From IMG/VR virus record IMGVR_UViG_3300035698_029839, positions 62,001 to 126,000 of that record: DNA of 64,000 bases. One strand, written 5' to 3'. The notes beneath the pieces were generated by a model, which was not told the origin of the DNA, made no database searches, and saw only the letters and a program-made list of their open reading frames with translations. This document shows positions 4,086-48,308 of this stretch, in pieces (the stretch's first letter is position 1; each line of letters starts with the position of its first letter). The position numbers were made by a program, and so were the translations under genes.

Positions 4086-4100
4086 ATTTCTCCTTTTTAT

Positions 4101-4117
4101 CGATATATTATATATCG
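4101..4117. promoter_or_regulatory. Palindrome CGATATAT-T-ATATATCG in the divergent neuB/kdsC intergenic region
   Basis: Perfect 8-bp arms; contains TATAAT on the - strand; near-identical site at 28892-28909. Confidence 0.6.
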
Positions 4118-4136
4118 TCAAAAAGTGAAAAATACT

Positions 4137-4166: not shown

Positions 4167-4226
4167 GTATTTATAGATATGGTTGAAAAAGTTATTTTAA
4201 CATAAGTCTTTATTATCTGGTGATTT

Positions 4227-21363: not shown

Positions 21364-21832
21364 ATTTGATATAATTTCATCAGATTTGTTTTTTTATCGT
21401 TATAAGCCAGATATGGAATATTATTATGAAAAATATTGGGGAAAAGATGGTAATTTTTTATATATCAAGAACCACCCATTGGCTATATTTGCATCTGATT
21501 ATGTAAAGTACGGTAAAGAAATATTAAATAATTTAGATAATCATATTTTTATAAGATATGAATATGATAGGTATTCTAGTGCAGAGACTGTTAAAAATGA
21601 CACTCATAAATATAATGCTTCAAAGAGAATTATGGATATGGTTGATTCTATAAGGAAGTATGGTTATTGTTCTGGGAAATATGATAAATCAAAACATTTG
21701 ATAAGAGTTATTAAAACTGTCGATAAAAGATATATACAAGGGAAAGAGGTATATGTTTTAAAAACTAGAAAGCATAGAGCATCAGCATGTTGTGCTTTAG
21801 GCATAAAAAATATAAAAGTTAAAGTTGTTTAA
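21353..21832 (+). CDS. ParB/Srx-like domain protein (degenerate motif)
   Basis: DSIRKYGY...RKHRASACCALGIKNIKV; similar to 53723. Confidence 0.5.
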   Translation: MLSRFDIISSDLFFYRYKPDMEYYYEKYWGKDGNFLYIKNHPLAIFASDYVKYGKEILNNLDNHIFIRYEYDRYSSAETVKNDTHKYNASKRIMDMVDSIRKYGYCSGKYDKSKHLIRVIKTVDKRYIQGKEVYVLKTRKHRASACCALGIKNIKVKVV

Positions 21833-22971
21833 TGAAAAGAATATTATTAATAGCTACCATTTATAGAGTTGGCGAAAAAATATATCCCATTATAGAGGGT
21901 TTATCTAAAGAGTTTGAAATAGATGTTCTACATATGTTCCAGATGAGTCCTGATACAAAATTGCCTAAAGAAGGAGATTATAGGAAGTTATTTCAATCCA
22001 AATATAGTGATTATATTTGTAACCAATATTATGGACCATGCTTTATAAAAACTGGTGATATAGATGGAGAAAGATCAAGAAATTTCTTAAAAAGTTTTGA
22101 GAATATTGTAAAGAATAATAATTATTCTCTTGCTATATGGGATAATAATCAACCTACAAAGGGAGGGGCAATTTCAGAATTCTATCAAATGCTTTCAAAA
22201 TACAATATAAAAGTTATAGCTTCTCCTCATGCTAATAAAGATTATAAGAAATATAAATTAAGTAAAAGGATAGGAGCCACATATGATTATTCTTTTGTTT
22301 TTGGTGAAAAAGAAAGATTTAAATTATCTAGGATAAAGAAGAGAACATTATTTAGTGCCGATAAAATATATGAGAGGTTTTTACCTGCTGGTATACCATC
22401 TAATGATGCTCTGAAAAATTACGATAAGCCAGGTAAATACATTTTGATTATACCTAATTTTACTGAGGCTCAACCTAAAAATTCTAGATCAAGACATTCG
22501 AAACCATTTACTAAAGAAGTTTTTTTAAAATTAAAAATTCTTGAATTAAGTAATAAATATGGTTGCCCTATTGTTATTAAGGAAAAACCAAGAGCTTTTT
22601 ATAAAGAATATAAATTTAGAGATGTATTGAATAAGTATGATAATATAGAATTTTTATATTATTGTGAAGATGATAATAAGCTTATGGCAGATGCTAAAAT
22701 GGTTATTGGGTCTCCTTCAACATTTATGCTCAAACCAATTCAGTTGGGTATACCTACGGTTATTTTAAATGGTCAGGGAGAGATAGGCAATTTTTCTGAT
22801 TATCCTGGTTTGGTAGAACCTTCGTATGAGAATATTTTAAGATCTATTAAATTTCAAATGGATAATGGTAGATTTGATGATTATATTAAGAGGACTTTAT
22901 CGGGAGGATTAGATTTTACATCTACTAATTTATATGTTAATAATATAAGGAATTTAGTTTATGAGAAATGA
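21832..22971 (+). CDS. GT-B-fold transferase-like protein, copy 1
   Basis: ASPH, PAGIPSND, ILIIPNF and DDNKL.ADAKMVI..PST...KPIQLG motifs. Confidence 0.6.
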   Translation: MKRILLIATIYRVGEKIYPIIEGLSKEFEIDVLHMFQMSPDTKLPKEGDYRKLFQSKYSDYICNQYYGPCFIKTGDIDGERSRNFLKSFENIVKNNNYSLAIWDNNQPTKGGAISEFYQMLSKYNIKVIASPHANKDYKKYKLSKRIGATYDYSFVFGEKERFKLSRIKKRTLFSADKIYERFLPAGIPSNDALKNYDKPGKYILIIPNFTEAQPKNSRSRHSKPFTKEVFLKLKILELSNKYGCPIVIKEKPRAFYKEYKFRDVLNKYDNIEFLYYCEDDNKLMADAKMVIGSPSTFMLKPIQLGIPTVILNGQGEIGNFSDYPGLVEPSYENILRSIKFQMDNGRFDDYIKRTLSGGLDFTSTNLYVNNIRNLVYEK

Positions 22972-23605
22972 ATTAGATTTATTTGCTCAAAAATACGGAA
23001 CAGATAAGCGTAGCTCAAAACATTATTATACCAAATGGTATAATAATTATTTTAGAGATTTACGTGATAAAAAAATAAATATACTTGAAATAGGTATTAA
23101 AAAAGGAGCATCTGTTTTGATGTGGAGGGATTATTTTAAAAATGGTAATGTGTTTGGGATAGATATAGAGGATCATAAAAGTTATAGTCGTAAGTTAAAA
23201 GGCATAAAGTGCTTTATAGGAGATGCTTCTGATGATTCTTTTTTATCTAAAGTTGAGTCTAAAGTTGCAGGTGGTTTTGACATTATTATAGATGACGCTA
23301 GTCATGAACCCTCTCATCAGATATCTGGGTTTGAGTGTTTGTTTTCTAAGCTCAATAAAGGTGGAATTTATGTTGTAGAAGATTTGCATACATCTTATGA
23401 AAATAAGGATATATCTTCTTATATTAATGCTGTTGATTATTTTAAAAGACTTGTAGATGAAGTTAATTTTAATGGTAAGAATAAATATCAAAATTTTAAT
23501 AGGATTAAAGAAGAGATTATGAAAGAATCAACATATTATGAAAGAACAATAGAATCTATATGCTTTCATATGGGCATATGTTTTATTTTTAAGAGGAAAG
23601 TATAA
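22961..23605 (+). CDS. Class I sugar O-methyltransferase, copy 2 (paralogue of 20701)
   Basis: YGTDK, ILEIGI, FDIIIDDASH and GGIYVVEDL motifs. Confidence 0.85.
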   Translation: MRNELDLFAQKYGTDKRSSKHYYTKWYNNYFRDLRDKKINILEIGIKKGASVLMWRDYFKNGNVFGIDIEDHKSYSRKLKGIKCFIGDASDDSFLSKVESKVAGGFDIIIDDASHEPSHQISGFECLFSKLNKGGIYVVEDLHTSYENKDISSYINAVDYFKRLVDEVNFNGKNKYQNFNRIKEEIMKESTYYERTIESICFHMGICFIFKRKV

Positions 23606-24765
23606 TGAAAAAAAATATATTATTTATTACTACCACATACTTAACTGGGGAAAAAATATATCCTATTATACCAGTATTAAGTAAAATACATAATATTGAA
23701 GTTTTGAATTTATATAGTATGTCAAAACATACTGATTGGTCATTTGATTATGATCCGAGACAACGTTTTTATAATATGTGTGATAATTTAAATATAAAAA
23801 TGACGGATGGCCCATCTGTTTGTAGTGATAAATCTGTTGATATAAAAAAATATTCTGAATTTTTTGATAATTTTGAAAAAGTTTTAAGTAGTAATTATGA
23901 TTTAGTTATTATAGATAATAACTGGAAAGACAAACATATGGGGTGGAAGAGAATGTCCCAGTATTTTTCACAAAATAAGATACCCATTATTGCCAGTCCG
24001 CATGGTAATACTGGGGATAAAACTAATAGATTGCTGAAGAGGATGGGTTATCTTTTTGATTTTTCTTTTATATTTGGAGAAAGAAGAAAAGAAAATGTAA
24101 TTAGATATGAAAAAAGTATCTCTCAAGAGAATCTTTATAAAATAGATAGGATGTTTCCAGCAGGTATTCCATCTAATGACAAGTTAAAAGAATATGAACG
24201 AGGTAATAAATATATACTGATAATTCCTAATTTTACGATGCCTCCACCTAAGCATGGTAAAAATAAAAAATGGAATTGGAAACAATTTACAGTGGAGTTG
24301 TTTGATGAATTAAAAATACATAAATTAAGTGAAGATAATAATTGCCCAATTGTTATAAAACGAAAACATAGATTATTTTATAAAACAGGATTATTAGAGT
24401 CATCTTTTAAAAAATATAAAAAAATAGTTAAAATTATAGATGTTTGTGAAGATGACAATAAATTAATAGCAGATGCTAAAATGGTTATTAGCGCTCCTTC
24501 CACTATGTCTTTTAAGCCTATCCAATTGGGAGTACCTACTGTTTTATTAAGGGGTCATGGTCAGATCGGAGATTTTAGTAATTATCCTGGATTAATAGAT
24601 CCATCTTATGATAAAATTAAAAGGTCTCTTGAGCAACAGAAAGAACAGGGGAGAAATGTTGAATTTATTGCTGAAACTTTATCTGGGGGGGTGGAATATA
24701 ATTCTATACAGATACATATGGAATATATTAACAAGATTTTAACAGGAGAAATAAAGTGTCATTAA
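23605..24765 (+). CDS. GT-B-fold transferase-like protein, copy 2 (paralogue of 21832)
   Basis: Same motifs as 21832. Confidence 0.6.
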   Translation: MKKNILFITTTYLTGEKIYPIIPVLSKIHNIEVLNLYSMSKHTDWSFDYDPRQRFYNMCDNLNIKMTDGPSVCSDKSVDIKKYSEFFDNFEKVLSSNYDLVIIDNNWKDKHMGWKRMSQYFSQNKIPIIASPHGNTGDKTNRLLKRMGYLFDFSFIFGERRKENVIRYEKSISQENLYKIDRMFPAGIPSNDKLKEYERGNKYILIIPNFTMPPPKHGKNKKWNWKQFTVELFDELKIHKLSEDNNCPIVIKRKHRLFYKTGLLESSFKKYKKIVKIIDVCEDDNKLIADAKMVISAPSTMSFKPIQLGVPTVLLRGHGQIGDFSNYPGLIDPSYDKIKRSLEQQKEQGRNVEFIAETLSGGVEYNSIQIHMEYINKILTGEIKCH

Positions 24766-25292
24766 AATTACATCTTGGTTGCGGAGATAAACATATAGAT
24801 GGATATATTAATATTGATATCCGACCAATGGAAGAAGTTGATAAAGTTGATAATATAAAATATTTACGTTCATTTCAGAAAGATAGCGTTGACGTTATTT
24901 ATTCTGCTTCTGTTTTAGAGCATTTTATAAGATGGGAATATAAAAATGCTTTAAGAAGGTGGTACGAGATATTAAAGCTAGGAGGGATATTGAGATTAGG
25001 GGTTCCTGATTTTGAGGCTATTATAAAATATTATCAAAAAACAAATGATTTAGATGCAGTAATGGGATTATTGTATGGAGGTCAAGATTATGATCAAAAT
25101 TTTCATTATGTTTGTTGGGATTTTTATAGATTGAGCAATGACTTAAAAGAAGTTGGTTTTAAAAATATAAAGAGATATGATTGGAGAGATACAGAGCATT
25201 CAAATGTGGATGATTTTAGTCAATGTTATTTACCCCATATGGATAAAGATAATGGCATGTTGATGCACTTAAATGTAGAGGCAATTAAGTAA
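24756..25292 (+). CDS. Class I methyltransferase (Methyltransf_11-like)
   Basis: LHLGCG...GYINIDI, SVLEHF and GGILRLGVPDF motifs. Confidence 0.88.
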   Translation: MSLKLHLGCGDKHIDGYINIDIRPMEEVDKVDNIKYLRSFQKDSVDVIYSASVLEHFIRWEYKNALRRWYEILKLGGILRLGVPDFEAIIKYYQKTNDLDAVMGLLYGGQDYDQNFHYVCWDFYRLSNDLKEVGFKNIKRYDWRDTEHSNVDDFSQCYLPHMDKDNGMLMHLNVEAIK

Positions 25293-26272
25293 TGAGTCAA
25301 ATTGGTATTTTATTAACTAGTCGTAATAATTATGATTTTATGGAAAAGTTCTGGGTGCCCAATACTATGGGTAAATGTGACGTGAATTGTAAAGTTTTAA
25401 ATATAGATGAAGGTTCAAGTCTAGATGAAAAAGCTAAGGGCAAAATTTTATGTGAAAAATATGGTATAGATTACATGGATCGCGAAGAGCCAGGTATGCA
25501 TCATAATGTCTCTTCGGCTATACGTTTTTTTGGTGAGGAAGTTAAATATATAATATGGTTTCAACATGATTGTTGGCCTTTGCAAAGAGATTTTTTTACG
25601 AGATTTAACAGTATTGTTAATAGTGGCAAATTAGATGTTTTTGGGACTATTGGTTTTAATAGTCTTGCTCAAAATATGTTTAAAAGAAATAATGAGCATG
25701 AAGATATTATTATGGAATTTAAAGAAGAGAAAAAACCTATCGGAGTAATATCTAGGAGTGTTTTAGAAAGTGCTGGAGGAAGAGATCTTTATTATTGTGG
25801 GAAGAAAGTGGGCAAGAGAATACGATATCCTGTTGATAGGGATAAATTTTCTAAGCCATGTGCTATAGCTGTTCCAGTGTGGTATGCTATATCTGTGAAT
25901 GCTTCTTTATTTAAAAAAGAGATAGAGTTGGATAGAGGTATGCATTTTTTTAGATCTTGGGACGATATATCTTTTCAGTTTTTAAATAAAAATATATACA
26001 ATATAGTTCTTCCAGATTTTTATATAGAGCATAGACCAGATCTAAAAAGAGTTATTGGCCTGCCGCAACTGTCCGTTAAAAGAGTGAAAAAAGATGATAC
26101 CTATCATTCGGCAATTGGGTCAGGTCCAGAAGCATGGATAAAGGTATGGGGCTGGAATTTTGAAAAACCATCTACTTTTGAGAATGTTAAAAAAAGGTAC
26201 AAAGGAACTTTGCTAGAAAAATTCTATAAATATGATTATACAGCAGGCCCTTTGAAGATTTTTAATTTATAA
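25292..26272 (+). CDS. GT2-like glycosyltransferase
   Basis: ILLTSRN, LNIDEGS, WFQHDCW and SWDDISF motifs. Confidence 0.65.
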   Translation: MSQIGILLTSRNNYDFMEKFWVPNTMGKCDVNCKVLNIDEGSSLDEKAKGKILCEKYGIDYMDREEPGMHHNVSSAIRFFGEEVKYIIWFQHDCWPLQRDFFTRFNSIVNSGKLDVFGTIGFNSLAQNMFKRNNEHEDIIMEFKEEKKPIGVISRSVLESAGGRDLYYCGKKVGKRIRYPVDRDKFSKPCAIAVPVWYAISVNASLFKKEIELDRGMHFFRSWDDISFQFLNKNIYNIVLPDFYIEHRPDLKRVIGLPQLSVKRVKKDDTYHSAIGSGPEAWIKVWGWNFEKPSTFENVKKRYKGTLLEKFYKYDYTAGPLKIFNL

Positions 26273-26890: not shown

Positions 26891-26902
26891 TATTTGTTCC
26901 TT

Positions 26903-27943: not shown

Positions 27944-27945
27944 AT

Positions 27946-28949: not shown

Positions 28950-29903
28950 ATGAGAAAAATAATTTGTATAACACCTGTTAAACACATAGATGGAGCTATG
29001 GAAGCTCTTCAAGGACATGGAGAAGTTATTTATGACCCGTACATTAGTAAAGTAGATCTTAAAAATAAAATAATTAATAATGAAATAGATACTATATTTT
29101 GCAATCCCTGTAAACAGATTTTTAAGATTGATGAGGAATTATTGAGTGGAACAAAGATTAATACTATTTGCACTTCTTCTACGGGTAATAATCATATAGA
29201 CATGGTTTATTGTAAAATTAACAATATAAATGTTTTGGCTATAACTAAAGATTATAAAATACTTAAGACTATAACAGCTACAGCGGAAATGGCTTTTACT
29301 CTTACCCTAGCTATTATTAGGAATTTAATAAAAGCTGTTAAAAGTTCTAGTGAGTATGATTGGGACTATGAGAAACATAAGAGTAGACAATTAGATCATC
29401 TGTCTGTTGGTATTATCGGATATGGTAGACTGGGAGAGATTTATGCTAGGTTTTGTAGTCCTTTCTTTAAAGATATTTTGGTTGTAGATCCTTATAAAAA
29501 TGTCCCCAACGATTATCAACAAGTAGAGTTTGATGAATTATTGAAAGAGTCAGATGTTATTGCTCTTCATATTCATCTTAACAAAGAGAATCGTCATATA
29601 ATAAATGAAAAGTCAATTAATAAAATGAAAGATGGTGTTTATTTAATTAATACTTCTAGGGGTGACATAGTAGATGAAAAAGCGGTTATAGAAGCTATTA
29701 GAAGCGGAAAGATAAAAGGTTATGCTGCCGATGTTATATCAGATGAGTATAAAGACGGAGTTGCAGGAAGCGAATTAATTAAAGCTATGAATGAAGGATT
29801 GAATATTATTATTACTCCTCATATTTCTGGTTGTACTAAAGAATCTCAAAAAATAGCGTACTTATATGTTATATCTAAATTAGGAAAGAAGAGAAATGAT
29901 TAA
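28950..29903 (+). CDS. D-isomer-specific 2-hydroxyacid dehydrogenase (SerA-like)
   Basis: GIIGYGRLG, LINTSRGDIVDE and ITPHISG motifs. Confidence 0.9.
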   Translation: MRKIICITPVKHIDGAMEALQGHGEVIYDPYISKVDLKNKIINNEIDTIFCNPCKQIFKIDEELLSGTKINTICTSSTGNNHIDMVYCKINNINVLAITKDYKILKTITATAEMAFTLTLAIIRNLIKAVKSSSEYDWDYEKHKSRQLDHLSVGIIGYGRLGEIYARFCSPFFKDILVVDPYKNVPNDYQQVEFDELLKESDVIALHIHLNKENRHIINEKSINKMKDGVYLINTSRGDIVDEKAVIEAIRSGKIKGYAADVISDEYKDGVAGSELIKAMNEGLNIIITPHISGCTKESQKIAYLYVISKLGKKRND

Positions 29904-30606
29904 TAATAAAAAAATATTAGCTATCACTCTGGCAAGAGGAGGATCTAAAGCAGTTAAAAAGAAAAATATTGTCGATATCTGCGGCAAACCATTATTACAA
30001 TATACAACTGACGAAGTTAAGAAAAGTAAATATATTGATAGATATATAGTTTCTACTGACGCTGATGATATTAAAGAAGTTTGTGAAGAATTAGATGTTG
30101 AATATTATAATAGATCTAAAGAATTTGCTCAATCCACTTCTACAACTGAAGATGCATTGATAGAGGTTGTAAACAATATAGGTGAAAATTTTGATTATAT
30201 TGTTGAAATAATGTGTACAAATCCACTTAAGACTATTGAAGATATAGATGGATGTATAGAAAAAATAGAAAATACTGATGCTGATTCTGTTACGTCAGTT
30301 GTAAGGATATGGGACCATCATCCATCAAGAGCAAAATATATTGAGGACGATTTATTAAAAGATTTTTTTCCAGAAAAGCAGCACAGGCGACAAGATTTAA
30401 AACCTCCTGCTTATGTTAGGAATGGATCTGTCTATATTACATATGTAGATAAATTATTAAAATACAAAAATAGATTAAATGGTCTTATTAGGCCATATAT
30501 TATGTCAGAGGATAATACAATCAATATAGATGAACATAGAGATTTAGAATTAGCTAGAATTTTAATAAAAATATTAAGTAAGGATAAAAAAAATGAAAAA
30601 AATTAA
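29896..30606 (+). CDS. neuA: Acylneuraminate cytidylyltransferase (CMP-ulosonate synthetase)
   Basis: LARGGSKAVKKKNI, VSTD, RRQDL, RNGSVY and INIDE..D motifs. Confidence 0.9.
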   Translation: MINNKKILAITLARGGSKAVKKKNIVDICGKPLLQYTTDEVKKSKYIDRYIVSTDADDIKEVCEELDVEYYNRSKEFAQSTSTTEDALIEVVNNIGENFDYIVEIMCTNPLKTIEDIDGCIEKIENTDADSVTSVVRIWDHHPSRAKYIEDDLLKDFFPEKQHRRQDLKPPAYVRNGSVYITYVDKLLKYKNRLNGLIRPYIMSEDNTINIDEHRDLELARILIKILSKDKKNEKN

Positions 30607-31405
30607 GTTAATAGCGGAATTAGGATGGAATTGGATCGGAGATATTTCTCTTGCTAAAGAGATGATTTCAGCAGCAAAAGAATCAGGTGCTGATTATGCC
30701 AAATTTCAATCTTGGAAGGTTGATAGATTATTACCAGGTGCTTGGGATACAGATGGTAGAAGAGAGATATATAAAAAAGCAGAATTAACAGAAGAAAAAC
30801 ATCATATTATGAAAGAATACTGCGATTCTGTAGGAATTAAATTTCTTACTTCTTGTTTTTGCGAGAGAGATATAGATACTATGTTAAATTCTATTTTAAA
30901 TTTTACTAATGAGATTAAAATCCCAGGTGGCGATACGGGATGTCCTGAATTGGTGGAACCAGCTATAGAGAAATTTGATCATGTTTATATGTCTGTAGGT
31001 GCATTGGGTCTAGAAGAATATATTAAATGGGCATCTTATGACAACGTGACATTGATGCATTGTGTTTCTTCTTATCCTTGTAGTTTAGATCACGCTAACT
31101 TCCCAAAAATGAAATTCTTACAATCTCTTACTCCTCGAGTTGGGTATAGCGGACATGTTTTAGGTAATAGAGATGCGATGATTGCTATTGCCATGGGCGC
31201 TACTGTTATTGAGAAGCATTTTACTATTGATAATAATTTACCAGGAAAAGACAATCAGTTTTCTATTGAACCTCATGAGATGAAAGAAATAAAAGATTTT
31301 ATCGATGATTATGAAAAAGTAACAATTAATAGAGGGCTATTAGTACAAGAATGTGAGAGAGTTTATAAGGATAATTATGTAGGTAGATGGATGGGAGGAG
31401 AGTAA
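30593..31405 (+). CDS. neuB: NeuB-family synthase, tandem copy 1
   Basis: IAELGWNWIG, AKFQ, MHCVSSYP, GYSGH and IEKHFT motifs. Confidence 0.88.
   Translation: MKKIKLIAELGWNWIGDISLAKEMISAAKESGADYAKFQSWKVDRLLPGAWDTDGRREIYKKAELTEEKHHIMKEYCDSVGIKFLTSCFCERDIDTMLNSILNFTNEIKIPGGDTGCPELVEPAIEKFDHVYMSVGALGLEEYIKWASYDNVTLMHCVSSYPCSLDHANFPKMKFLQSLTPRVGYSGHVLGNRDAMIAIAMGATVIEKHFTIDNNLPGKDNQFSIEPHEMKEIKDFIDDYEKVTINRGLLVQECERVYKDNYVGRWMGGE
31025..31166 (+). repeat. 142-nt block with 3 mismatches to 31829-31970; 31194-31251 is also identical to 31998-32055
   Basis: Direct comparison, offset 804 nt. Confidence 0.9.
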
Positions 31406-31408
31406 AAA

Positions 31409-32203
31409 ATGAAAAAAGTTAAATTAGTTGCGGAGTTAGGTTGGAGTTGGGTTGGAGATGTTTCTCTTGCTAAAGAGATGGTTTTTGCAGCAAAAGAATC
31501 AGGTGCTGATTGTGCTAAATTTCAAACTTGGAAAGCGGAAAGATTAATACCTGGGCCTTGGGACGAGGATGGCAGAAGAGAGATATATAAAAAAGCAGAA
31601 TTTACAGTAGAAAAACATCATATTATGAAGGACTACTGTGATTCTCTAGGAATAGAATTTATGACTTCTTGTTTTTGCGAGAGAGATATAGATACTATTT
31701 TAGAGTTTGCCAATGAAGTTAAGATTCCAGGTGCAGATGGAAGTTGTATTCCATTAATAGAAAAAGTAGTAGAGAAATTTGATCACGTTTATTTGTCTAC
31801 TGGTGCATTGGGTTTAGAAGAATATATCAAATGGGCATCTTATGACAACGTGACATTGATGCATTGTGTTTCTTCTTATCCTTGTAGTTTAGAGAATGCT
31901 AACTTCCCAAAAATGAAATTCTTACAATCTCTTACTCCTCGAGTTGGGTATAGCGGACATGTTTTAGGTAGCCTGGATGCTATTCTTGCTATCGCTTTGG
32001 GCGCTACTGTTATTGAGAAGCATTTTACTATTGATAATAATTTACCAGGAAAAGATAATAAAATGTCTATTCTTCCAAGTCATATGAAAGAAATAAAAGA
32101 TTTTAGAGATGCTTATGATAAAATGACAATTGATAATGGATTATTAATACAAGAATGTGAGAAAAATTTTAGAAAATGTATGACTGGAAGGTGGGATGGG
32201 TGA
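31409..32203 (+). CDS. neuB: NeuB-family synthase, tandem copy 2
   Basis: VAELGWSWVG, MHCVSSYP, GYSGH and IEKHFT motifs. Confidence 0.88.
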   Translation: MKKVKLVAELGWSWVGDVSLAKEMVFAAKESGADCAKFQTWKAERLIPGPWDEDGRREIYKKAEFTVEKHHIMKDYCDSLGIEFMTSCFCERDIDTILEFANEVKIPGADGSCIPLIEKVVEKFDHVYLSTGALGLEEYIKWASYDNVTLMHCVSSYPCSLENANFPKMKFLQSLTPRVGYSGHVLGSLDAILAIALGATVIEKHFTIDNNLPGKDNKMSILPSHMKEIKDFRDAYDKMTIDNGLLIQECEKNFRKCMTGRWDG

Positions 32204-33012
32204 ATAAAGATTGGCTTTTAAATATTGAAAGTTATGAAAACAAAATATATTCTCAAGGAGGACAAGACGGAGTTATTGAATATATTTTTAATAATATAAG
32301 AACAAAAAATAACCCACCTTATTGTGTTGAGTTTGGATTTAATTCAGATACTTTAACTGGAGGTTCAGGTCCTAATGTTGCGAATCTTATTAAATATAAA
32401 GGATGGAAGGGTTTATTGTTAGATAGGGATTATGAGAATTTGGAAATTAATTTACATAAGCATTTTTTAACAAGCGATAATATTTGTGATATATTTAAAA
32501 TACATAATGTTCCTAAAGAGCCAGAATATGTTAGTATTGATATTGACTCTATAGACTTATGGTTATTTGAAGCGATTTTATCAGATTATAGGCCACTTGT
32601 TGTTTCGGTTGAATATAATTCTCTTTTTCCATTTGAGAGGGCTATAACTGTTTGTAATAACAATGATTTTAAAAAAAGAAAAGGTATGTATGGAGCATCT
32701 TTAAAAGCTTTAAAATTAGTTGGTGATAAATTCGGTTATGATATTATTAACATAGTGAGGGAAGATGTATTTTTTATAAGACATGATTTAATTGAAGATG
32801 TTAGTGCTATTCCTATAGAATATTTTAGAAATAAAACTTCTGTGGTTAGTAAGACACCTATACTTATATCAAAAAGGGGTTATAAGCTTGCTGATAAACT
32901 AGCTAAAAACTCTTTAGATTATGAAGTTTATTTAAAAACAGGCGGGGATATAAAAAAAAGTAGACAAGAAGCTTTTTTAATTAGCAGAGAATGTCTTCTA
33001 AAAAAGAAATAA
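32200..33012 (+). CDS. FkbM-like methyltransferase-fold protein
   Basis: YSQGGQDGVIEYIF, CVEFG, SIDIDSID and RPLVVSVEYN motifs; GTGA overlap start. Confidence 0.7.
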   Translation: MNKDWLLNIESYENKIYSQGGQDGVIEYIFNNIRTKNNPPYCVEFGFNSDTLTGGSGPNVANLIKYKGWKGLLLDRDYENLEINLHKHFLTSDNICDIFKIHNVPKEPEYVSIDIDSIDLWLFEAILSDYRPLVVSVEYNSLFPFERAITVCNNNDFKKRKGMYGASLKALKLVGDKFGYDIINIVREDVFFIRHDLIEDVSAIPIEYFRNKTSVVSKTPILISKRGYKLADKLAKNSLDYEVYLKTGGDIKKSRQEAFLISRECLLKKK

Positions 33013-33022: not shown

Positions 33023-33667
33023 ATGAATAGAACATTAATAGTTATACTTACATGGAATCGTTTGGAAAAAACTAAACATACCCTTAAGACTTTAAAAAAA
33101 CATAATGGTAGAGATCTAGATTTTTTATTCGTTGATAATGGATCAACTGATGGTACTGTAGAATTTGTAGAAAGAAAAGGCTGGAAAATAATTAAGAACA
33201 AAACTAATGAGGGTATTTTTAGAGCCACTACTAAAGCTTGGATGGAAGGAGTTAAGATGGGATATGATTTTATTCTGAATCTTCAGAACGATTTCCCATG
33301 TTCACGAAGAATACCTTTTAATACTCTTGAGTCATATATGGACAATAATTCTGATGTTTGTTATATAAGGTTAAATAAGAAGAAAGATAAAAAGAAAAAT
33401 ATTGTCACAAATGCTCTTATTAAATATCAGGAGGAAGAGAAATTTGAAGACTATAGAATATTAAAATGTAATTACCATGCAGGTTTTAATCCTTCTATGA
33501 TTAGATCTACTATTATAAAAGACTATATAAAATATGATGGAGACAATCCGAGAGAACGTATTCTTATGAATAATTTTGAAAAAATGGGTAAGCAGTGTGC
33601 CAAATTGTATCCAGAAGTTTTTGAAACATTAAGACAGAACCATCATATACCAGGTTGGATACATTAA
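33023..33667 (+). CDS. GT2 glycosyltransferase
   Basis: VILTWNR, FVDNGSTDGT and NLQND motifs. Confidence 0.85.
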   Translation: MNRTLIVILTWNRLEKTKHTLKTLKKHNGRDLDFLFVDNGSTDGTVEFVERKGWKIIKNKTNEGIFRATTKAWMEGVKMGYDFILNLQNDFPCSRRIPFNTLESYMDNNSDVCYIRLNKKKDKKKNIVTNALIKYQEEEKFEDYRILKCNYHAGFNPSMIRSTIIKDYIKYDGDNPRERILMNNFEKMGKQCAKLYPEVFETLRQNHHIPGWIH

Positions 33668-34407
33668 TGGGTCTTTTTTTAAATCATGAATTTGATAAAA
33701 ATAATAGAACTAAAACTGTAGTTATATATGGTTGTGGATCTTCTTTGAATGATCTTACCGATTTAGATAGTTATGTTCTGAGCCAGTTCGATAGTGTGGC
33801 GTTCAACTGGTTTTGTTTTTCCCATATTCCTGTTACTTATTACTTAGTTAGAGAGCAGGCTAATATTCCTAAAAGAGTTCATGGAGAAGAGACAGTCGAT
33901 AATTTTTACAATTTAATTAACAAGTATTATAAAAAAAGTTGTTTAGTTATTCATGATTTATATAATCATTCTCCTAATGCTTATCCTTACTGGCATGTCA
34001 ATAATGAAAAAGAATTTATTCCTAATTCTATTTATGTGCAAGATACAAAATTAAAAGGGAATGATCCAGGAGTGGATAGGTGGGGGAAAGAGAATATTTT
34101 GAAAGATGGTATATATCATGGAAAAACTACATTAACTAATACTTTACATTTTGCGGTATGGATGGGTTATGAAAGAATTATTTTTGTTGGTATAGATCTT
34201 TATGATTCTAAATATTTTTGGTTGAAAGATAATGAAACAAGATATTCTGTAAAGAATAAGAAAAAGACAAAAGATTCTAAGCACCAAGCGGCAAAGGACA
34301 CTTTGGGTTTAATTGAAAAAGTTAAAAAAATTTATCCAGATATAGAAATGTATACATATAATAAAAAATCTTTGTTATCTGGTGTTATTGGGGTGTGGAA
34401 TAGCTAA
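33667..34407 (+). CDS. Maf/DUF115 (Cst-II sialyltransferase-like) protein 1
   Basis: VVIYGCGSSL, VAFNW and GYERIIFVGIDLY motifs; TAATG-coupled start. Confidence 0.65.
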   Translation: MGLFLNHEFDKNNRTKTVVIYGCGSSLNDLTDLDSYVLSQFDSVAFNWFCFSHIPVTYYLVREQANIPKRVHGEETVDNFYNLINKYYKKSCLVIHDLYNHSPNAYPYWHVNNEKEFIPNSIYVQDTKLKGNDPGVDRWGKENILKDGIYHGKTTLTNTLHFAVWMGYERIIFVGIDLYDSKYFWLKDNETRYSVKNKKKTKDSKHQAAKDTLGLIEKVKKIYPDIEMYTYNKKSLLSGVIGVWNS

Positions 34408-34921
34408 GCCAAGAAATAAAAGATATGAGTATATCCTTAAACATCTTAAGAGATTAAGAGTAAGGCCAGGTTCAGTAGTTATCGATTGTGCTTGTGGAGA
34501 TGGATATGGATCTAGTATTTTAAATTCAGCAGATATGAGTGTTATAGGGTATGATATATCAGAAGAATTAGTATTTGCAGCTATCGAAAGAGGCATAGAA
34601 GCAGATATATCTAATATTTGTAATCTTCCATGCGAAGATGATATGGCTGATGTATTTGTTTGTTCAGAAACGCTGGAACATTTAGATAAACAAGAATCTC
34701 AAAAGGCAGTTAATGAAATAAAAAGAACTACTAAAAAAAATGGAATTATTTGTGTGACGGTTCCATCAGATCCTAAGTTGTGTCTTAGAAATAAAAATCA
34801 TAAACAATATTTATCTTTGAAAAATTTGAAAGATATTTTTAGCGATTGTCATATATTATTTCATGGAGAGTTTTGTAAGAAACCAGGAAAATGTAATACA
34901 GTAGTTTTTTTTAGAAAATAG
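34382..34921 (+). CDS. Class I methyltransferase (start uncertain)
   Basis: VIDCACGDGYG, GYDIS and VCSETLEHL motifs. Confidence 0.85.
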   Translation: MLLGCGIAKPRNKRYEYILKHLKRLRVRPGSVVIDCACGDGYGSSILNSADMSVIGYDISEELVFAAIERGIEADISNICNLPCEDDMADVFVCSETLEHLDKQESQKAVNEIKRTTKKNGIICVTVPSDPKLCLRNKNHKQYLSLKNLKDIFSDCHILFHGEFCKKPGKCNTVVFFRK

Positions 34922-34923
34922 AT

Positions 34924-35784
34924 ATGAACATACTTTTTGTAACTGATAAACAAGGCAGGATTCAGTATAACAGGGCAAAGATATTACAAAATTTAATTAA
35001 GAATCATTCAATAGAAGTCGCCACATTAAAAGATAGAAATATTAATTGGAAGAGATATGATTTAATTTACTATTCTCATTTTTCCCTGCATAAGAAAATT
35101 CCTGCTCCAGAAAATAAAACAATTCTCACATCTATAACTAGTCATAAATGTTTGTCAGATTTTAAAAAGACTTTAAAAATTTTAGATAAGTTTGATAGAG
35201 TATCGGTCAATAATACAATTCTGTTTGATAAATTTAAAGATAATATTAAAAACTTATATTACACTCCTAATGGGGTAGACACTTCTTTTTTCGCACCTGA
35301 TTATAATGATCTTCATGATGATATTATTTTTGGGTGGGTTGGGAATATTGATAGAGCTACTAAAAGGTATAATGAAATTGTTATTCCTTTGAGTAAGAAA
35401 TATACTTTCAAGATAATAGGGACTTCTAAAAAAGATTGTATAGATAAATTATTAAACAAGCAAGAGATGAGAGATTATTATAATAGTATCGATTATTTTG
35501 TTGTTTCTAGTGATACGGAGGGAACTCCAAATCCTGCTCTTGAGGCCATGTCCTGTGGTATTCCTGTAATAACCACTAAAGTGGGCAATATGATAGAGAT
35601 TGTTGATTCTGGGGTATCTGGTTTCTTTGTAGAGGGTGATATGCAATCATTTATAGATGTTATAAAAAATTTATCAAAAAGTGATTACCAAGAAATGTGT
35701 ATTAAATCTAGAAATAGGATTGAATCATGGGATTGGTCGATAAAATATAGGGATTGGTGTAATTTTTTATTTAATAAAGGTTAG
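34924..35784 (+). CDS. GT4 glycosyltransferase
   Basis: TPNGVD and EGTPNPALEAMSCGIPV motifs. Confidence 0.9.
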   Translation: MNILFVTDKQGRIQYNRAKILQNLIKNHSIEVATLKDRNINWKRYDLIYYSHFSLHKKIPAPENKTILTSITSHKCLSDFKKTLKILDKFDRVSVNNTILFDKFKDNIKNLYYTPNGVDTSFFAPDYNDLHDDIIFGWVGNIDRATKRYNEIVIPLSKKYTFKIIGTSKKDCIDKLLNKQEMRDYYNSIDYFVVSSDTEGTPNPALEAMSCGIPVITTKVGNMIEIVDSGVSGFFVEGDMQSFIDVIKNLSKSDYQEMCIKSRNRIESWDWSIKYRDWCNFLFNKG

Positions 35785-46563: not shown

Positions 46564-47379
46564 ATGAAAGAAGAAACATATATAGGTATTATACCTGCAA
46601 GATATCAATCATCACGTTTCCCAGGAAAACCTCTTTGTGATATCTTAGGACAACCTATGATTAGAATAGTTTATGATTCGGTTATGAAGTGGAATAGGTG
46701 GAAAAATGTTTATGTAGCCACTGATAGTGAAAAAATAAAAAAGAGATGTGAGGAATTTAAAGTGCCTGTTATTATGACAAAAGATACTCATACTGATTGT
46801 TTAGATAGAGCGGCAGAAGTGGTGGAAATTTTAGAATCTAATAAAAATGGTGCTGATAAATATGTAGTAGTGCAAGGAGATGAACCTCTATTTAATGTTG
46901 ACACTTTAGATACTGATCTAACTCCTTCCATTATTAATTTTTATACGGAAGTTCATGATCAATATGATAAATATGATAGTAATGCTGTTAAAGTAGTAAT
47001 TTCAAATAATTGTAAGGCTTTATATTTTTCAAGATATTCAGTGCCATATCATGATAATAAAACTAAAAGAACTGATGATGAAGAAGTTGTTTTAAAACAA
47101 ATAGGTGTATATGTTTTTAGCGGAGAAATGTTGAAAATTTATACTAGTTTAAAACAAACTTCTTTAGAGAATATGGAGGGAATTGGGCTAAATCGTCTTA
47201 TAGAAAATGATATAGAAGTACATATGAGATATACTAAGCACGATAGTATAAGTGTTGATACTCCAGAAGATAGAAATAGAATTATAAAATTAATTAAAAA
47301 ATATTATAGTGATATTGGTTCTTCTATTAATGATGATGGTAGTGTTATAAATTGTGATGGAAATAGTAGGATGATATAA
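46564..47379 (+). CDS. kdsB: 3-deoxy-manno-octulosonate cytidylyltransferase family (CMP-Kdo synthetase)
   Basis: IIPARYQSSRFPGKPL, VQGDEP, ALYFSR and SVDTPED motifs. Confidence 0.92.
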   Translation: MKEETYIGIIPARYQSSRFPGKPLCDILGQPMIRIVYDSVMKWNRWKNVYVATDSEKIKKRCEEFKVPVIMTKDTHTDCLDRAAEVVEILESNKNGADKYVVVQGDEPLFNVDTLDTDLTPSIINFYTEVHDQYDKYDSNAVKVVISNNCKALYFSRYSVPYHDNKTKRTDDEEVVLKQIGVYVFSGEMLKIYTSLKQTSLENMEGIGLNRLIENDIEVHMRYTKHDSISVDTPEDRNRIIKLIKKYYSDIGSSINDDGSVINCDGNSRMI

Positions 47380-48308
47380 TGAAATTAATATTGTCAGTTA
47401 CTAAAAGATGTAATATGAGATGTCCTAATTGTTTGTGGATTTTAGAAAAAGGAGATTTTTTTAATAAAGACGATATGCCTCTTCAAGATGCTATAGATAT
47501 TTTTGAATATTATAAAAAAAATAAGTTAAAAAACGTAGTTTTGCAAGGAGAGGGAGAGGTTTTTTTATATCCTTATTTTAAAGAACTTTATTCTTATTTT
47601 CTTAAATCTAAAGTTGCTTTGAATGGAATTACAACTAATGGTTTGATTCTTGATAAATTTTTATATGTTGCTAAAGATGTTGGGCTAACAATTAGCTTAG
47701 ATGGATATGATAGTCAAAGTTATATGGAACATAGAGGTGGTGGGGAAGATCAATTTAACAAAGTATTAGATAATATAAGAGAAGTTTTAAAAGTTAAAAA
47801 TAGAAAAAAAATAGTTATAAATTGTATCGTCTCCCTTACTGATTATAAAAAAATACCAGGCATGATAGCACTAGCAGAATCCTTAGGCGTAGATTATATG
47901 AGATTTGGAAACTACCATCCCATAGCGGGTGATTTAAAACCTTTGTTTGATACTGATAAAGAAGTTGTTGATTTTTATAAAAATATTATTAGCAAAGATG
48001 ATTATAAAGTTAATATCACGCTGCCAGGTTTGATGAGTACAAATAAAGGGAAGCTTAAATGCAGTATGCTTAAGTGCAAAAACGTTGGTTCTGAAGGTTT
48101 TTATTCTCCATGTTGTCATATATCTACAGATGTTAAATATGGATCTTTCCCTAATGAATCAAAAAGTTTAACGGAATTTAAAAAACAATTTAGTAATGCT
48201 AAAAAAATAACCGATCTTCCAGAGCCATGTAGATTATGTCCTAGATTATTTAAAAATAGAATAATTTTTAATAAAGATAGCAAAAAGTGGAGTAAAAAAT
48301 TATTGTGA
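47379..48308 (+). CDS. Radical SAM/SPASM(twitch)-domain protein
   Basis: CNMRCPNC and TTNG motifs; C-terminal C...SPCC...CRLCP. Confidence 0.9.
   Translation: MKLILSVTKRCNMRCPNCLWILEKGDFFNKDDMPLQDAIDIFEYYKKNKLKNVVLQGEGEVFLYPYFKELYSYFLKSKVALNGITTNGLILDKFLYVAKDVGLTISLDGYDSQSYMEHRGGGEDQFNKVLDNIREVLKVKNRKKIVINCIVSLTDYKKIPGMIALAESLGVDYMRFGNYHPIAGDLKPLFDTDKEVVDFYKNIISKDDYKVNITLPGLMSTNKGKLKCSMLKCKNVGSEGFYSPCCHISTDVKYGSFPNESKSLTEFKKQFSNAKKITDLPEPCRLCPRLFKNRIIFNKDSKKWSKKLL

What the first reader, a model, noticed from the sequence alone, without database searches (positions are those of the whole stretch)
30593..32203. Tandem NeuB pair with Trp replacing the conserved N-terminal Asn-His motif
Seen: AELGWNWIG and AELGWSWVG, versus family AEIGxNHxG; the third copy at 3249 has AEIGGTHIG. 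All three lack the C-terminal AFP-like domain. The pair has GYSGH rather than GxSDH. Established: the AFP-like domain contributes to the neighbouring active site in bacterial NeuB, and GYSGH occurs in 9-phosphate synthases such as human NANS. Inference: these make non-canonical ulosonic acids or act as a hetero-oligomer. No neuC, pse or leg precursor genes were seen, so the aldose substrate is probably unusual.
Basis: partly seen in the sequence, partly recalled or inferred. Interest (0 to 1): 0.7.

Follow-up and report, generated by a model that had tools for sequence, protein, structure and literature searches.

The report
Duplicated short sialic-acid-synthase-like genes in phage
Two adjacent genes in a very large salt-lake phage are a recent duplicate of a short, uncharacterised branch of the sialic-acid-synthase (NeuB) family, and this branch almost always sits beside a 2-hydroxyacid dehydrogenase and a CMP-activating enzyme in marine bacteria and their phages, which points to an acidic surface sugar pathway that has not been described.

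Summary
The two ORFs (30593-31405, 270 aa; 31409-32203, 264 aa) are real, intact, NeuB-only proteins that are 75% identical. They carry the quoted motifs. The title is imprecise. The first Trp fills the variable x position and is a hallmark of a whole subfamily (109/122). Asn is kept in copy 1 and is Ser in copy 2. Only His→Trp departs from canonical NeuB, where His is 33/33. His→Trp/Phe/Tyr has arisen several times within this subfamily.

Both copies keep the metal ligands and catalytic residues, and dN/dS between them is 0.38. The subfamily is about 265 aa, has no SAF domain, ends in an invariant Arg-Trp, and forms one clade (100/98) apart from labelled neuB/pseI references.

It is linked to a D-2-hydroxyacid dehydrogenase in 55/56 viral loci and 27/45 cellular loci, against 0/32 loci with SAF-bearing NeuB. 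It is also linked to a NeuA-like cytidylyltransferase, and the two partners are fused once.

Every relative examined has one copy, so the tandem pair is lineage-specific. A heterodimer is predicted (0.84; best control 0.00; mark reached by 51/78 solved complexes, 2/108 mismatches) but cannot be told from homodimers.

The most likely role is an active ulosonic-acid synthase feeding a CMP-sugar into a phage glycan island. The product is unknown.

The parts
30593..31405 (+). Short NeuB copy 1 (270 aa), the faster-evolving duplicate. Motifs: AELGWNWIG, KIPGGD, GYSGH, EKHF, C-terminal GRW.
   Evidence: Pfam NeuB E 4.5e-48. AF2 pLDDT 91.9, TIM barrel with TM 0.85 to NmNeuB. Branch length 0.22 against 0.042 for copy 2. 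An AAGGA sequence lies upstream of the ATG, and the start overlaps the last 14 nt of the cytidylyltransferase gene.
31409..32203 (+). Short NeuB copy 2 (264 aa), the conservative duplicate. Motifs: AELGWSWVG, KIPGAD, GYSGH, EKHF, C-terminal GRW.
   Evidence: Pfam NeuB E 1.2e-50. 89% identical to metagenome protein P0002, which is single-copy on its contig. A GGAGGAG sequence lies about 10 nt upstream of the ATG, inside the end of copy 1.
29896..30606 (+). NeuA-like CMP-ulosonate cytidylyltransferase (236 aa).
   Evidence: Pfam CTP_transf_3 E 1.7e-25. NCBIfam PseF E 3e-30, below cut-off. Best solved relatives are CMP-Neu5Ac synthetases. An ortholog lies within 8 kb of the short NeuB in 53/56 viral loci.
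28950..29903 (+). D-isomer-specific 2-hydroxyacid dehydrogenase (317 aa). It keeps the GxGxxG motif and the Arg/Glu/His catalytic motifs.
   Evidence: Pfam 2-Hacid_dh_C E 8.6e-45. An ortholog is present in 55/56 viral loci and in 27/45 cellular short-NeuB loci, against 0/32 long-NeuB loci. It is fused to the cytidylyltransferase in L020 (557 aa).
32176..33012 (+). Unknown 278-aa protein between copy 2 and the GT2. It overlaps the end of copy 2 by 28 nt.
   Evidence: No Pfam or NCBIfam hit. Relatives occur in only 4/56 viral loci.
33023..33667 (+). Small GT2 glycosyltransferase (214 aa) at the position conserved after the short NeuB.
   Evidence: Pfam Glycos_transf_2 E 5.6e-11. A small GT2 follows the NeuB in L012, L013, L017 and L018. 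The small-GT2 cluster is found in 44/56 viral and 32/45 cellular short-NeuB loci, against 0/32 long-NeuB loci.
33655..34407 (+). MptE-like (DUF115/Maf-type) protein (250 aa), a candidate ulosonic-acid transferase.
   Evidence: Pfam PF01973 E 3.2e-6, below the gathering score. The window holds three such ORFs. That Maf proteins transfer Pse/Leg is from my own knowledge.
34382..35784 (+). SAM methyltransferase (179 aa) followed by a GT4-type glycosyltransferase (286 aa), syntenic with relatives.
   Evidence: The same order is seen in L012 and L017.
21832..24765 (+). Two paralogous 379-aa and 386-aa GT-B-fold proteins ('cluster 5') flanking a methyltransferase. The predicted fold is closest to NeuC-type hydrolysing 2-epimerases.
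   Evidence: No Pfam hit. AF2 pLDDT 90. VIA-align Z 22.3 to NeuC against about 18 for generic GT-B chains. The top Swiss-Prot fold hits are hydrolysing 2-epimerases. hhalign against an Epimerase_2 profile gives probability 2.9%. Present in 35/56 viral loci but only 1/45 cellular loci.
25292..26272 (+). 'Cluster 6' protein (326 aa), probably a GT-A-fold glycosyltransferase, conserved upstream of the dehydrogenase.
   Evidence: Present in 35/56 viral loci. A profile search gives only weak hits to SpsA and DPM synthase (E 0.2-0.5).
3249..4121 (-). Third SAF-less NeuB (290 aa; AEIGGTHIG, GYSNH). It belongs to a different lineage, 26-27% identical to the pair.
   Evidence: It lies on a long separate branch in the family tree.
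4227..4796 (+). HAD-type phosphatase, divergently adjacent to the third NeuB. This fits a 9-phosphate synthase plus phosphatase pair.
   Evidence: Pfam Hydrolase/HAD hits, E 6.5e-8.
46564..50000 (+). Second, analogous module: cytidylyltransferase (271 aa), radical SAM (309 aa), 2-hydroxyacid dehydrogenase (316 aa) and HpcH/HpaI pyruvate aldolase (250 aa).
   Evidence: The genes were located.

Best explanation
ORF1 and ORF2 are a lineage-specific tandem duplicate of one gene. That gene belongs to a distinct branch of the NeuB family that is about 265 residues long and lacks the SAF domain. NeuB enzymes condense phosphoenolpyruvate with the aldehyde of a sugar to give a 3-deoxy-2-ulosonic acid.

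Both copies are most likely active enzymes. They are predicted to dimerise with each subunit's C-terminal tail, which ends in an invariant Arg-Trp, lying on the partner's active-site rim. That is the place the SAF lid and its Arg314 occupy in canonical NeuB.

The pair works in a conserved module with the upstream D-2-hydroxyacid dehydrogenase, the NeuA-like cytidylyltransferase and the downstream small GT2 and Maf-like transferases. The keto-acid sugar is CMP-activated and built into a glycan encoded by this phage's glycan island of more than 60 kb.

His to Trp is a tolerated, recurrent substitution in this branch. It is coupled to Met to Ile/Val/Leu at the next residue and does not define function.

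Shown: family membership, fold, retained catalytic residues, purifying selection, the duplication, and the gene linkage. Inferred: enzyme activity, the capping role of the tail, the order of steps, and use in a glycan. Unknown: the aldose, the product, and which step the dehydrogenase performs. The same dehydrogenase plus cytidylyltransferase pairing recurs in this window with a non-homologous aldolase (HpcH). I therefore infer that the dehydrogenase acts on the alpha-keto/alpha-hydroxy-acid end that both aldol products share.
For: Family and fold:
- Pfam NeuB.
- The AF2 model has TM 0.83-0.85 to NmNeuB, 6ncs, PseI and LegI.

Catalytic set: the equivalents of NmNeuB E25, K53, Q55, K129, S154, Y186, S213, H215, E234, H236 and D247 are kept in both copies (residue list from PMC6795526). 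They are invariant across the subfamily.

Selection: dN/dS 0.38 and dS 0.40 between the copies. Almost no subfamily-conserved position is lost.

Duplication:
- Tree topology is (ORF1,(ORF2,P0002)).
- There is one NeuB in six related contigs and in 54/56 IMG/VR loci.
- The junction is confirmed by independent unitigs.

Subfamily: one clade with 100/98 support, apart from labelled neuB/pseI and from SAF-bearing NeuBs.

Linkage:
- Dehydrogenase in 55/56 and cytidylyltransferase in 53/56 viral loci.
- Dehydrogenase in 27/45 cellular short-NeuB loci against 0/32 long-NeuB loci (Fisher p 1.8e-8 on the phmmer counts of 26/47 against 0/33).
- A cytidylyltransferase-dehydrogenase fusion exists.
- The three genes are contiguous in Neptuniibacter, Prochlorococcus and Synechococcus.

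Tail: GRW is invariant (R 119/122). Residues 242-269 lie in the predicted interface together with the rim loops 41, 89-90, 112-117 and 158-161. The ORF1/ORF2 differences are enriched in the tail (48% against 22%, p 0.012).

His position: H 92, F 14, W 12, Y 1 and A 1 of 122, with at least 4 origins. It covaries with position 15 (p 3.7e-9, not corrected for phylogeny).

Second module with an HpcH aldolase.
Against: - No activity, product or expression data exist. No RNA run was found that holds the sequence.
- The pair's clade replaces a Ser that is invariant in 33/33 long NeuBs, and that I recall as a PEP-phosphate ligand, with Gly. It also replaces the neighbouring Glu with Asp. This could alter or weaken catalysis.
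- The SAF Arg314 is essential in NmNeuB (PMC6795526). That the tail Arg replaces it is inference only, because no coordinates were available to me.
- The role of the dehydrogenase is unexplained by any known ulosonic-acid pathway.
- The record is only about 62% complete, so absent precursor genes may lie in the missing part.
- The record is classed as viral by IMG/VR and shows PHROG matches to phage replication genes. No terminase or capsid gene was found.
Confidence: 0.6

Rival explanations
1. They are ordinary nonulosonic-acid synthases making a Neu5Ac-, Leg- or Pse-type product. They have simply lost the SAF domain and use an N-acetyl-hexosamine precursor supplied by the host or by genes in the missing 38% of the genome.
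For: - The cytidylyltransferase is NeuA/PseF-like.
- Three Maf-like (MptE-like) ORFs lie in the window.
- In relatives, Epimerase_2 lies within 8 kb in roughly 11-20 of the 56 viral loci (the two tallies differ) and SDR epimerase/dehydratases in 48/56. Both are present in Neptuniibacter.
- The nearest reviewed fold matches are LegI, PseI and NANS.
- Two upstream proteins have a NeuC-like predicted fold.
Against: - The subfamily forms a separate clade from labelled neuB/pseI.
- It is only 25-33% identical to any characterised synthase.
- The N-acetyl-binding SAF Arg314 is absent.
- No DegT aminotransferase or Epimerase_2 occurs in the 297.7-kb record.
- The dehydrogenase is linked to this subfamily only, 0/32 for SAF-bearing NeuBs. 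No known Neu/Leg/Pse pathway needs such an enzyme.
Confidence: 0.2
2. Reduce-then-activate. The 2-keto acid made by the NeuB (or by the HpcH aldolase in the second module) is reduced at C2 by the dehydrogenase to a 3-deoxy-aldonic acid. The cytidylyltransferase then activates that acid for attachment through a phosphodiester. This would resemble ribulose-5-phosphate reductase plus cytidylyltransferase in CDP-ribitol synthesis, where the two enzymes are fused in some bacteria (my own knowledge).
For: - The dehydrogenase keeps the Arg/Glu/His motifs of enzymes that act on 2-oxo/2-hydroxy carboxylates.
- The pairing of dehydrogenase and cytidylyltransferase recurs with two unrelated aldol-type enzymes whose products share only the 4-hydroxy-2-oxo-acid end.
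- A fusion of the two exists.
- GYSGH, as in 9-phosphate synthases (from memory), together with the lack of a conserved phosphatase would fit a retained phosphate.
Against: - The cytidylyltransferase belongs to the CTP_transf_3/NeuA family. Its known members attack CTP with the anomeric hydroxyl of an intact 2-ulosonic acid, and reduction at C2 would remove that hydroxyl (family knowledge).
- No such pathway has been described.
- Nothing here shows the order of steps.
Confidence: 0.12
3. The two copies form an obligate heterodimer with divided labour. Alternatively copy 1 is a non-catalytic partner or is decaying.
For: - A heterodimer is predicted with ipSAE 0.84 and best control 0.00. The mark was reached by 51/78 solved complexes and 2/108 mismatches. 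Runs agree in at least 95% of contacts and the partner pLDDT is 90.
- Copy 1 evolves about five times faster than copy 2.
- Differences between the copies are concentrated in the partner-contacting tail.
- The close spacing and the Shine-Dalgarno-like sequence inside the end of copy 1 suggest translational coupling.
Against: - Every relative works with a single copy, so a homodimer is the ancestral state.
- Both copies keep every catalytic residue, and dN/dS is 0.38.
- A pass for close paralogues of a dimeric family does not say which member binds.
Confidence: 0.15

Closest known systems
Bacterial sialic acid synthase NeuB (N. meningitidis, PDB 1XUU/1XUZ) and its relatives PseI (8H2C) and LegI
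   Same: They share the TIM-barrel fold (TM 0.83-0.85) and the two metal-binding His. The equivalents of E25, K53, Q55, K129, Y186, S213, E234 and D247 are kept, and a dimer is predicted. A NeuA-like cytidylyltransferase lies next door.
   Different: - There is no SAF/AFP-like domain and so no Arg314 lid.
- The protein ends in GRW at the boundary where the SAF domain would start.
- The AE.G.NH motif becomes AELGW[NS]W.
- GxSDH becomes GYSGH.
- The KI[AG]S.E loop becomes KIPG[GA]D.
- Identity is 25-33%.
- The proteins fall in a separate clade.
- They score below the NCBIfam equivalog cut-offs.
- They are linked to a 2-hydroxyacid dehydrogenase.
SAF-less NeuB homologue of Leptospira borgpetersenii (PDB 6NCS, 290 aa; function not established to my knowledge)
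   Same: It is a solved precedent for a NeuB barrel without the SAF domain. TM by target is 0.79 and E-values are 5e-21 to 8e-22.
   Different: Identity is only 27%. 6NCS keeps AEAGLNHGG and GYSDH and lacks the W/W and GRW signatures. It aligns better with the window's third copy.
N-acetylneuraminate-9-phosphate synthase (human NANS, Q9NR45)
   Same: It shares the fold (TM 0.85, 28% identity). It also has GYSGH, which I state from memory and did not check here.
   Different: NANS has a SAF domain and works with a dedicated phosphatase. No phosphatase is conserved next to the pair, whereas the window's third copy does have a HAD neighbour.
Uncharacterised short 'GWNH...GRW' NeuB proteins of Pelagibacter, Prochlorococcus, Synechococcus, SAR86, Neptuniibacter caesariensis MED92 and many uncultivated phages
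   Same: They have the same length, signature motifs, GRW end and module (dehydrogenase, cytidylyltransferase, small GT2). Identity is 40-89%.
   Different: Most keep His at the NH position and Ser/Glu in the KIPS.E loop. All examined have a single copy. The window's clade has W, G and D at those positions, and only this genome has a tandem pair.

Membership tests
NeuB family (Pfam PF03102): PEP-dependent ulosonic-acid synthase barrel | Significant match to the family profile over the whole barrel | tested here: met
   E 4.5e-48 and 1.2e-50, profile positions 1-235 and 1-227 of 241.
NeuB family (Pfam PF03102): PEP-dependent ulosonic-acid synthase barrel | Two metal-binding His (NmNeuB H215, H236) and the catalytic/ligand residues E25, K53, Q55, K129, Y186, S213, E234, D247 | tested here: met
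   All align to identical residues in both copies and are invariant in the subfamily. Residue list from PMC6795526.
NeuB family (Pfam PF03102): PEP-dependent ulosonic-acid synthase barrel | (beta/alpha)8 barrel fold like solved NeuB/PseI | tested here: met
   AF2 pLDDT 91.9. Foldseek TM 0.83-0.85 to 1xuu, 6ncs and 8h2c.
NeuB family (Pfam PF03102): PEP-dependent ulosonic-acid synthase barrel | PEP + aldose condensation activity | not testable with these tools
   Needs an enzyme assay.
Canonical two-domain NeuB/LegI/PseI synthases | C-terminal SAF/AFP-like domain supplying Arg314 to the partner's active site | tested here: not met
   The proteins are 270 and 264 aa with NeuB as the only Pfam domain. 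The model ends after the linker helix.
Canonical two-domain NeuB/LegI/PseI synthases | N-terminal AE.G.NH.G motif with invariant Asn-His | tested here: not met
   His is 33/33 and Asn 32/33 in SAF-bearing NeuBs. The pair has N-W and S-W.
Canonical two-domain NeuB/LegI/PseI synthases | Score above the NCBIfam equivalog cut-offs (TIGR03569 NeuB, TIGR03586 PseI) | tested here: not met
   159-164 bits against 399.65 and 120-123 bits against 340.25. Part of the shortfall is due to the missing domain.
Canonical two-domain NeuB/LegI/PseI synthases | Clusters with characterised or labelled synthases in a family tree | tested here: not met
   The short subfamily is a clade with 100/98 support, apart from PGAP-labelled neuB and pseI. 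No labelled LegI was in the tree. LegI is 29-33% identical by fold search.
Canonical two-domain NeuB/LegI/PseI synthases | Precursor genes alongside (NeuC/LegG 2-epimerase; PseB/C/H/G or LegB/C/H) | tested here: inconclusive
   No Epimerase_2 or DegT occurs in the 297.7-kb record. However, the record is about 62% complete, and two upstream proteins have a NeuC-like predicted fold without sequence support.
9-phosphate synthases (NANS / Kdn-9-P synthase type) | GYSGH-type motif, a phosphorylated aldose substrate and a partner phosphatase | tested here: inconclusive
   GYSGH is present. No phosphatase is conserved in the module. Substrate not testable here. That NANS has this motif is from memory.
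   The pair departs only at H14, S112, E114 and R219.
   Both lie directly upstream. Subfamily frequencies are 55/56 and 53/56 in viral loci and 27/45 and 36/45 in cellular loci.

The most novel reading that the evidence does not exclude
The module of short NeuB, D-2-hydroxyacid dehydrogenase, NeuA-like cytidylyltransferase and small GT2 makes a nucleotide-activated acidic sugar that has not been described. Its synthesis includes a dehydrogenase step at an alpha-keto/alpha-hydroxy-acid function. This sugar would be a common surface component of the ocean's most abundant bacteria (SAR11, Prochlorococcus, Synechococcus, SAR86) and would be copied by their phages. On this reading, the duplicated pair with its altered active-site loop and divergent tails means this huge phage makes two variants of the sugar, or uses a heterodimer with a new specificity.
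Probability: 0.35. Interest if true: 0.8.

Novelty: new variant of a known kind. Interest (0 to 1): 0.55.

Why it matters
Ulosonic acids such as sialic, legionaminic and pseudaminic acids and Kdo cap many microbial surface glycans. They decide recognition by phages, grazers and immune systems. This work delimits a large, uncharacterised branch of the synthase family that has done away with the SAF lid thought to be essential in the model enzyme.

The branch is tied to a dehydrogenase that no known ulosonic-acid pathway uses. It is carried by SAR11, Prochlorococcus and many uncultivated phages. Working out its product would add a sugar, and possibly a new activation logic, to the surface chemistry of the most abundant marine bacteria. 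It would also help explain why phages invest in glycan islands tens of kilobases long. Cultured carriers such as Neptuniibacter caesariensis MED92 and Pelagibacter isolates make the question directly testable.

The specific observation that prompted the finding, Trp in the NH motif, is by itself a minor variation that this branch tolerates.

Tried and rejected
1. Giant eukaryotic virus origin. Rejected: the record shows phage-type DnaE-like polymerase, DnaB-like helicases and strong PHROG matches, with almost all genes on one strand.

2. Assembly artefact for the tandem pair. Rejected: the copies are 83% identical at DNA level, and unitigs from other runs cross the junction without differences.

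3. A remnant of a second copy in the closest relative's contig (L016). None found.

4. Trp-for-His as the key functional change. Rejected: the change is recurrent in the subfamily, covaries with the neighbouring residue, and the position is not a listed ligand contact in NmNeuB.

5. Enrichment of copy 1 / copy 2 differences in catalytic-face loops. Not seen (18% against 22%).

6. 'Cluster 5' as a cryptic NeuC. The fold search favours this. The profile-profile comparison does not (probability 2.9%), and the cluster co-occurs with a true Epimerase_2 in some phages. Left unresolved.

7. Profile searches of clusters 5 and 6 against PDB sequences gave nothing significant.

8. Seven literature searches found no description of this subfamily, of its dehydrogenase linkage, or of phage-encoded versions. 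The cyanophage 'cytidylyltransferase' AMG in PMC9146016 is compared there to glycerol-3-phosphate cytidylyltransferase, a different enzyme from the NeuA-type one here.

9. GenBank phage isolates hold no close relative. There were three hits, all at 30% identity or less.

10. A Terminase_6N search of the record was negative.

11. I considered dehydrogenase roles upstream of the synthase, supplying glyoxylate, hydroxypyruvate or a uronic-acid-derived aldose. I could find no evidence to choose among them.

Full report
WHAT IS THERE

The window is bases 62001-126000 of a 297.7-kb IMG/VR virus record that CheckV estimates to be 62% complete. The record is 31% G+C and has nearly every gene on the + strand. 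It encodes a phage-type DnaE-like polymerase, DnaB-like and other helicases, and several proteins with strong PHROG matches. No terminase or capsid gene was found in the part held. The sequence recurs in a dozen salt-lake metagenome runs and at low share in marine ones.

At the stated coordinates lie two intact ORFs, 30593-31405 (270 aa) and 31409-32203 (264 aa). Each matches only Pfam NeuB (E 4.5e-48 and 1.2e-50). They are 75% identical in protein and 83% in DNA. Each has a Shine-Dalgarno-like sequence upstream, and the one for copy 2 lies inside the end of copy 1. Unitigs from two other runs cross the junction without a single difference, so the tandem pair is real.

THE MOTIFS

Aligned to N. 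meningitidis NeuB, E25-I-G-I28-N29-H30 corresponds to E9-L-G-W12-N13-W14 in copy 1 and to E9-L-G-W12-S13-W14 in copy 2. Three points follow.

- The first Trp sits at the variable x position. Among 122 close homologues it is Trp in 109, so it is a subfamily hallmark.
- Asn is kept in copy 1.
- Only His to Trp departs from canonical NeuB. In 33 SAF-bearing NeuBs taken from genomes and plasmids the His is 33/33 and the Asn 32/33.

Within the short subfamily the His position reads H 92, F 14, W 12, Y 1 and A 1. On a tree the aromatic forms need at least four origins each for W and F. They covary with the next residue: Met follows His in 60/92 sequences but follows an aromatic residue in only 1/27 (p 3.7e-9, not corrected for phylogeny). 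Asn29 and His30 are not among the ligand-contact residues listed for NmNeuB (PMC6795526). I read the change as a packing swap that this branch tolerates.

GYSGH is the modal form of the subfamily (103/122), whereas long NeuBs have Asp there in 31/33.

The pair and four close relatives (clade support 100/98) change the KI[AP]S.E loop to KIPG[GA]D. This removes a Ser that is 33/33 in long NeuBs.

ARE THEY ENZYMES?

Both copies keep the two metal-binding His and the equivalents of E25, K53, Q55, K129, S154, Y186, S213, E234 and D247. These positions are invariant across the subfamily. Between the copies dN/dS is 0.38 with dS 0.40, and almost no subfamily-conserved position is lost in either.

The AF2 model of copy 1 (pLDDT 91.9) is a (beta/alpha)8 barrel with one linker helix. 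Its TM is 0.83-0.85 to NmNeuB, PseI and the SAF-less Leptospira chain 6ncs. The closest reviewed proteins are MJ1065, LegI, PseI and NANS at 25-33% identity. I therefore take both copies to be active PEP-condensing synthases. This is an inference.

THE MISSING LID

Canonical NeuB is a domain-swapped dimer. Arg314 of the SAF domain reaches the partner's active site and is essential (PMC6795526). The short proteins end exactly where the SAF domain would begin, in a Gly-Arg-Trp that is nearly invariant (R 119/122, W 102/122).

A complex prediction of copy 1 with copy 2 passed. The ipSAE was 0.84 and the best control 0.00. The mark was reached by 51 of 78 solved complexes and 2 of 108 mismatched pairs. 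The runs agreed in at least 95% of contacts and the partner's pLDDT was 90. The interface is made of residues 242-269 of each chain together with the partner's rim loops (41, 45-51, 89-90, 112-117, 158-172). This fits a tail that caps the partner's site in place of the SAF domain.

The pass may simply reflect the known family dimer. It cannot tell heterodimers from homodimers.

The differences between the two copies are not enriched in the catalytic-face loops (18% against 22%). They are enriched in the tail (48% against 22%, p 0.012).

THE SUBFAMILY AND ITS COMPANY

A homologue search returned 2740 proteins, and the best 120 were all 228-288 aa (nearly all 256-288). The Atlas clusters nearest to copy 2 are 66-100% viral.

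In a family tree containing PGAP-labelled neuB and pseI genes and 19 SAF-bearing NeuBs, the short GWNH...GRW proteins form one clade (100/98) apart from the references. The window's third copy and two archaeal short forms lie elsewhere, so the SAF domain has been lost at least three times.

The short NeuB is linked to partner genes as follows.

- Of 56 IMG/VR loci that encode a short NeuB, 55 encode a D-2-hydroxyacid dehydrogenase and 53 a CTP_transf_3 cytidylyltransferase within 8 kb. The usual order is dehydrogenase, cytidylyltransferase, a methyltransferase or unknown gene, NeuB, then a small GT2.
- In cellular genomes (Pelagibacter, Prochlorococcus, Synechococcus, SAR86, Scalindua, Neptuniibacter caesariensis MED92 and others) the dehydrogenase is present at 27/45 short-NeuB loci and at 0/32 long-NeuB loci. 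The small GT2 is present at 32/45 against 0/32. On the phmmer counts of 26/47 against 0/33, Fisher p is 1.8e-8.
- In one 461-kb phage contig the cytidylyltransferase and the dehydrogenase are fused into a 557-aa protein.
- In Neptuniibacter, Prochlorococcus and Synechococcus the three genes are contiguous.

The cytidylyltransferase is closest to CMP-Neu5Ac synthetases. The dehydrogenase keeps the Arg/Glu/His motifs of its family but is not close to any characterised member. I found no paper describing this module.

THE DUPLICATION

Six related contigs and 54 of 56 viral loci have one NeuB. In the tree copy 1 is sister to copy 2 plus the metagenome protein P0002, with support 95/66 and 93/71 in the two trees. 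Its branch is five times longer (0.22 against 0.042). P0002's contig carries a single copy and no remnant of a second. The pair is thus a lineage-specific tandem duplicate in which copy 2 stays conservative and copy 1 drifts under purifying selection.

PRECURSORS

Neither Epimerase_2 nor DegT was found.

Two caveats apply. First, the record is incomplete. Second, two paralogous proteins at 21832-22971 and 23605-24765 have no Pfam match, yet their confident model (pLDDT 90) is closest to NeuC and other hydrolysing 2-epimerases: VIA-align Z is 22.3 against about 18 for generic GT-B enzymes, and the top Swiss-Prot hits are LegG/NeuC/GNE. A profile-profile comparison with true Epimerase_2 proteins gives only 2.9% probability. 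Some phages carry both kinds. These proteins may equally be GT-B transferases.

In relatives, true Epimerase_2, SDR epimerase/dehydratases and UDP-sugar dehydrogenases often accompany the module. An N-acetyl-hexosamine-derived aldose therefore remains possible.

A SECOND MODULE

At 46564-50000 the window has a cytidylyltransferase, a radical SAM protein, a second 2-hydroxyacid dehydrogenase and an HpcH/HpaI pyruvate aldolase. NeuB and HpcH are unrelated enzymes, but both make 4-hydroxy-2-oxo acids. The repeated pairing with a dehydrogenase and a cytidylyltransferase suggests that the dehydrogenase acts on the alpha-keto/alpha-hydroxy-acid end. This inference leaves two readings. In one, the dehydrogenase modifies or generates the keto acid that is then CMP-activated. 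In the other, it reduces the acid before a CDP-ribitol-like activation. I could not decide between them.

VERDICT

The pair is a new, duplicated variant within a large, uncharacterised, SAF-less branch of the NeuB family. Its most informative feature is its conserved company rather than its Trp residues. The product is unknown. A non-canonical acidic sugar is plausible but unproven.

Noticed in passing
window 1-64000: Almost the whole 64-kb window is a glycan-building island in a huge phage. Among 82 ORFs there are at least 5 GT2, 5 GT4-type and many SAM methyltransferases. There are also 3 NeuB, 3 MptE/Maf-like and 3 radical SAM proteins, 2 SDR epimerases, a GDP-mannose dehydratase, a nucleotidyltransferase and UDP-sugar dehydrogenases. 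About half of the ORFs have no Pfam match.
   Followed up: partly
window 46564-50000: A second module pairs a cytidylyltransferase and a 2-hydroxyacid dehydrogenase with a radical SAM enzyme and an HpcH/HpaI pyruvate aldolase in place of a NeuB. A Maf-like gene (44553-45227) and methyltransferases lie upstream.
   Followed up: partly
window 3249-4796: A third SAF-less NeuB of a different lineage (GYSNH) lies divergently next to a HAD phosphatase. This is the arrangement expected for a 9-phosphate synthase plus phosphatase.
   Followed up: partly
window 21832-22971 and 23605-24765: Two paralogous proteins have no Pfam family. Their predicted fold is closest to NeuC-type hydrolysing UDP-sugar 2-epimerases, but profile comparison with Epimerase_2 is negative. 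They are common in phage versions of the module (35/56) and almost absent from cellular ones (1/45).
   Followed up: partly
L020:5556-7229 (IMGVR_UViG_3300037247_001786, 461 kb) and L015:2438-4084: The cytidylyltransferase and the 2-hydroxyacid dehydrogenase are fused into one protein of 548-557 aa in a related huge phage.
   Followed up: partly
window 10763-11494: An RraA-like / HMG-CHA-aldolase-family protein (Pfam E 3.4e-16). It is a third kind of pyruvate-type aldolase fold in the same island.
   Followed up: no
window 2075-3260 and 5574-6272: A NADAR-domain protein (E 3e-49), a cREC/receiver-domain protein and a peptide deformylase sit at the edge of the glycan island.
   Followed up: no
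window 26267-28866 (- strand): The only block on the minus strand is a methyltransferase, a radical SAM/SPASM protein and an unknown 306-aa protein. It is inserted between the conserved GT-A-like gene and the dehydrogenase. Relatives L012 and L013 lack it or carry other genes there.
   Followed up: no
window 55510-58523: A profile built from the UDP-sugar dehydrogenase cluster of related phages hits three adjacent ORFs (55510-56328, 56321-57421, 58221-58523). These may be separate dehydrogenases or a split gene.
   Followed up: no
G000 whole record; L019-L023: The closest relatives of this island lie on IMG/VR contigs of 341-548 kb. The window's record has nearly all genes on one strand, a strongly positive GC skew and 31% G+C. 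No host was established. The nearest cellular copies of the short NeuB are in SAR11, picocyanobacteria and SAR86.
   Followed up: partly
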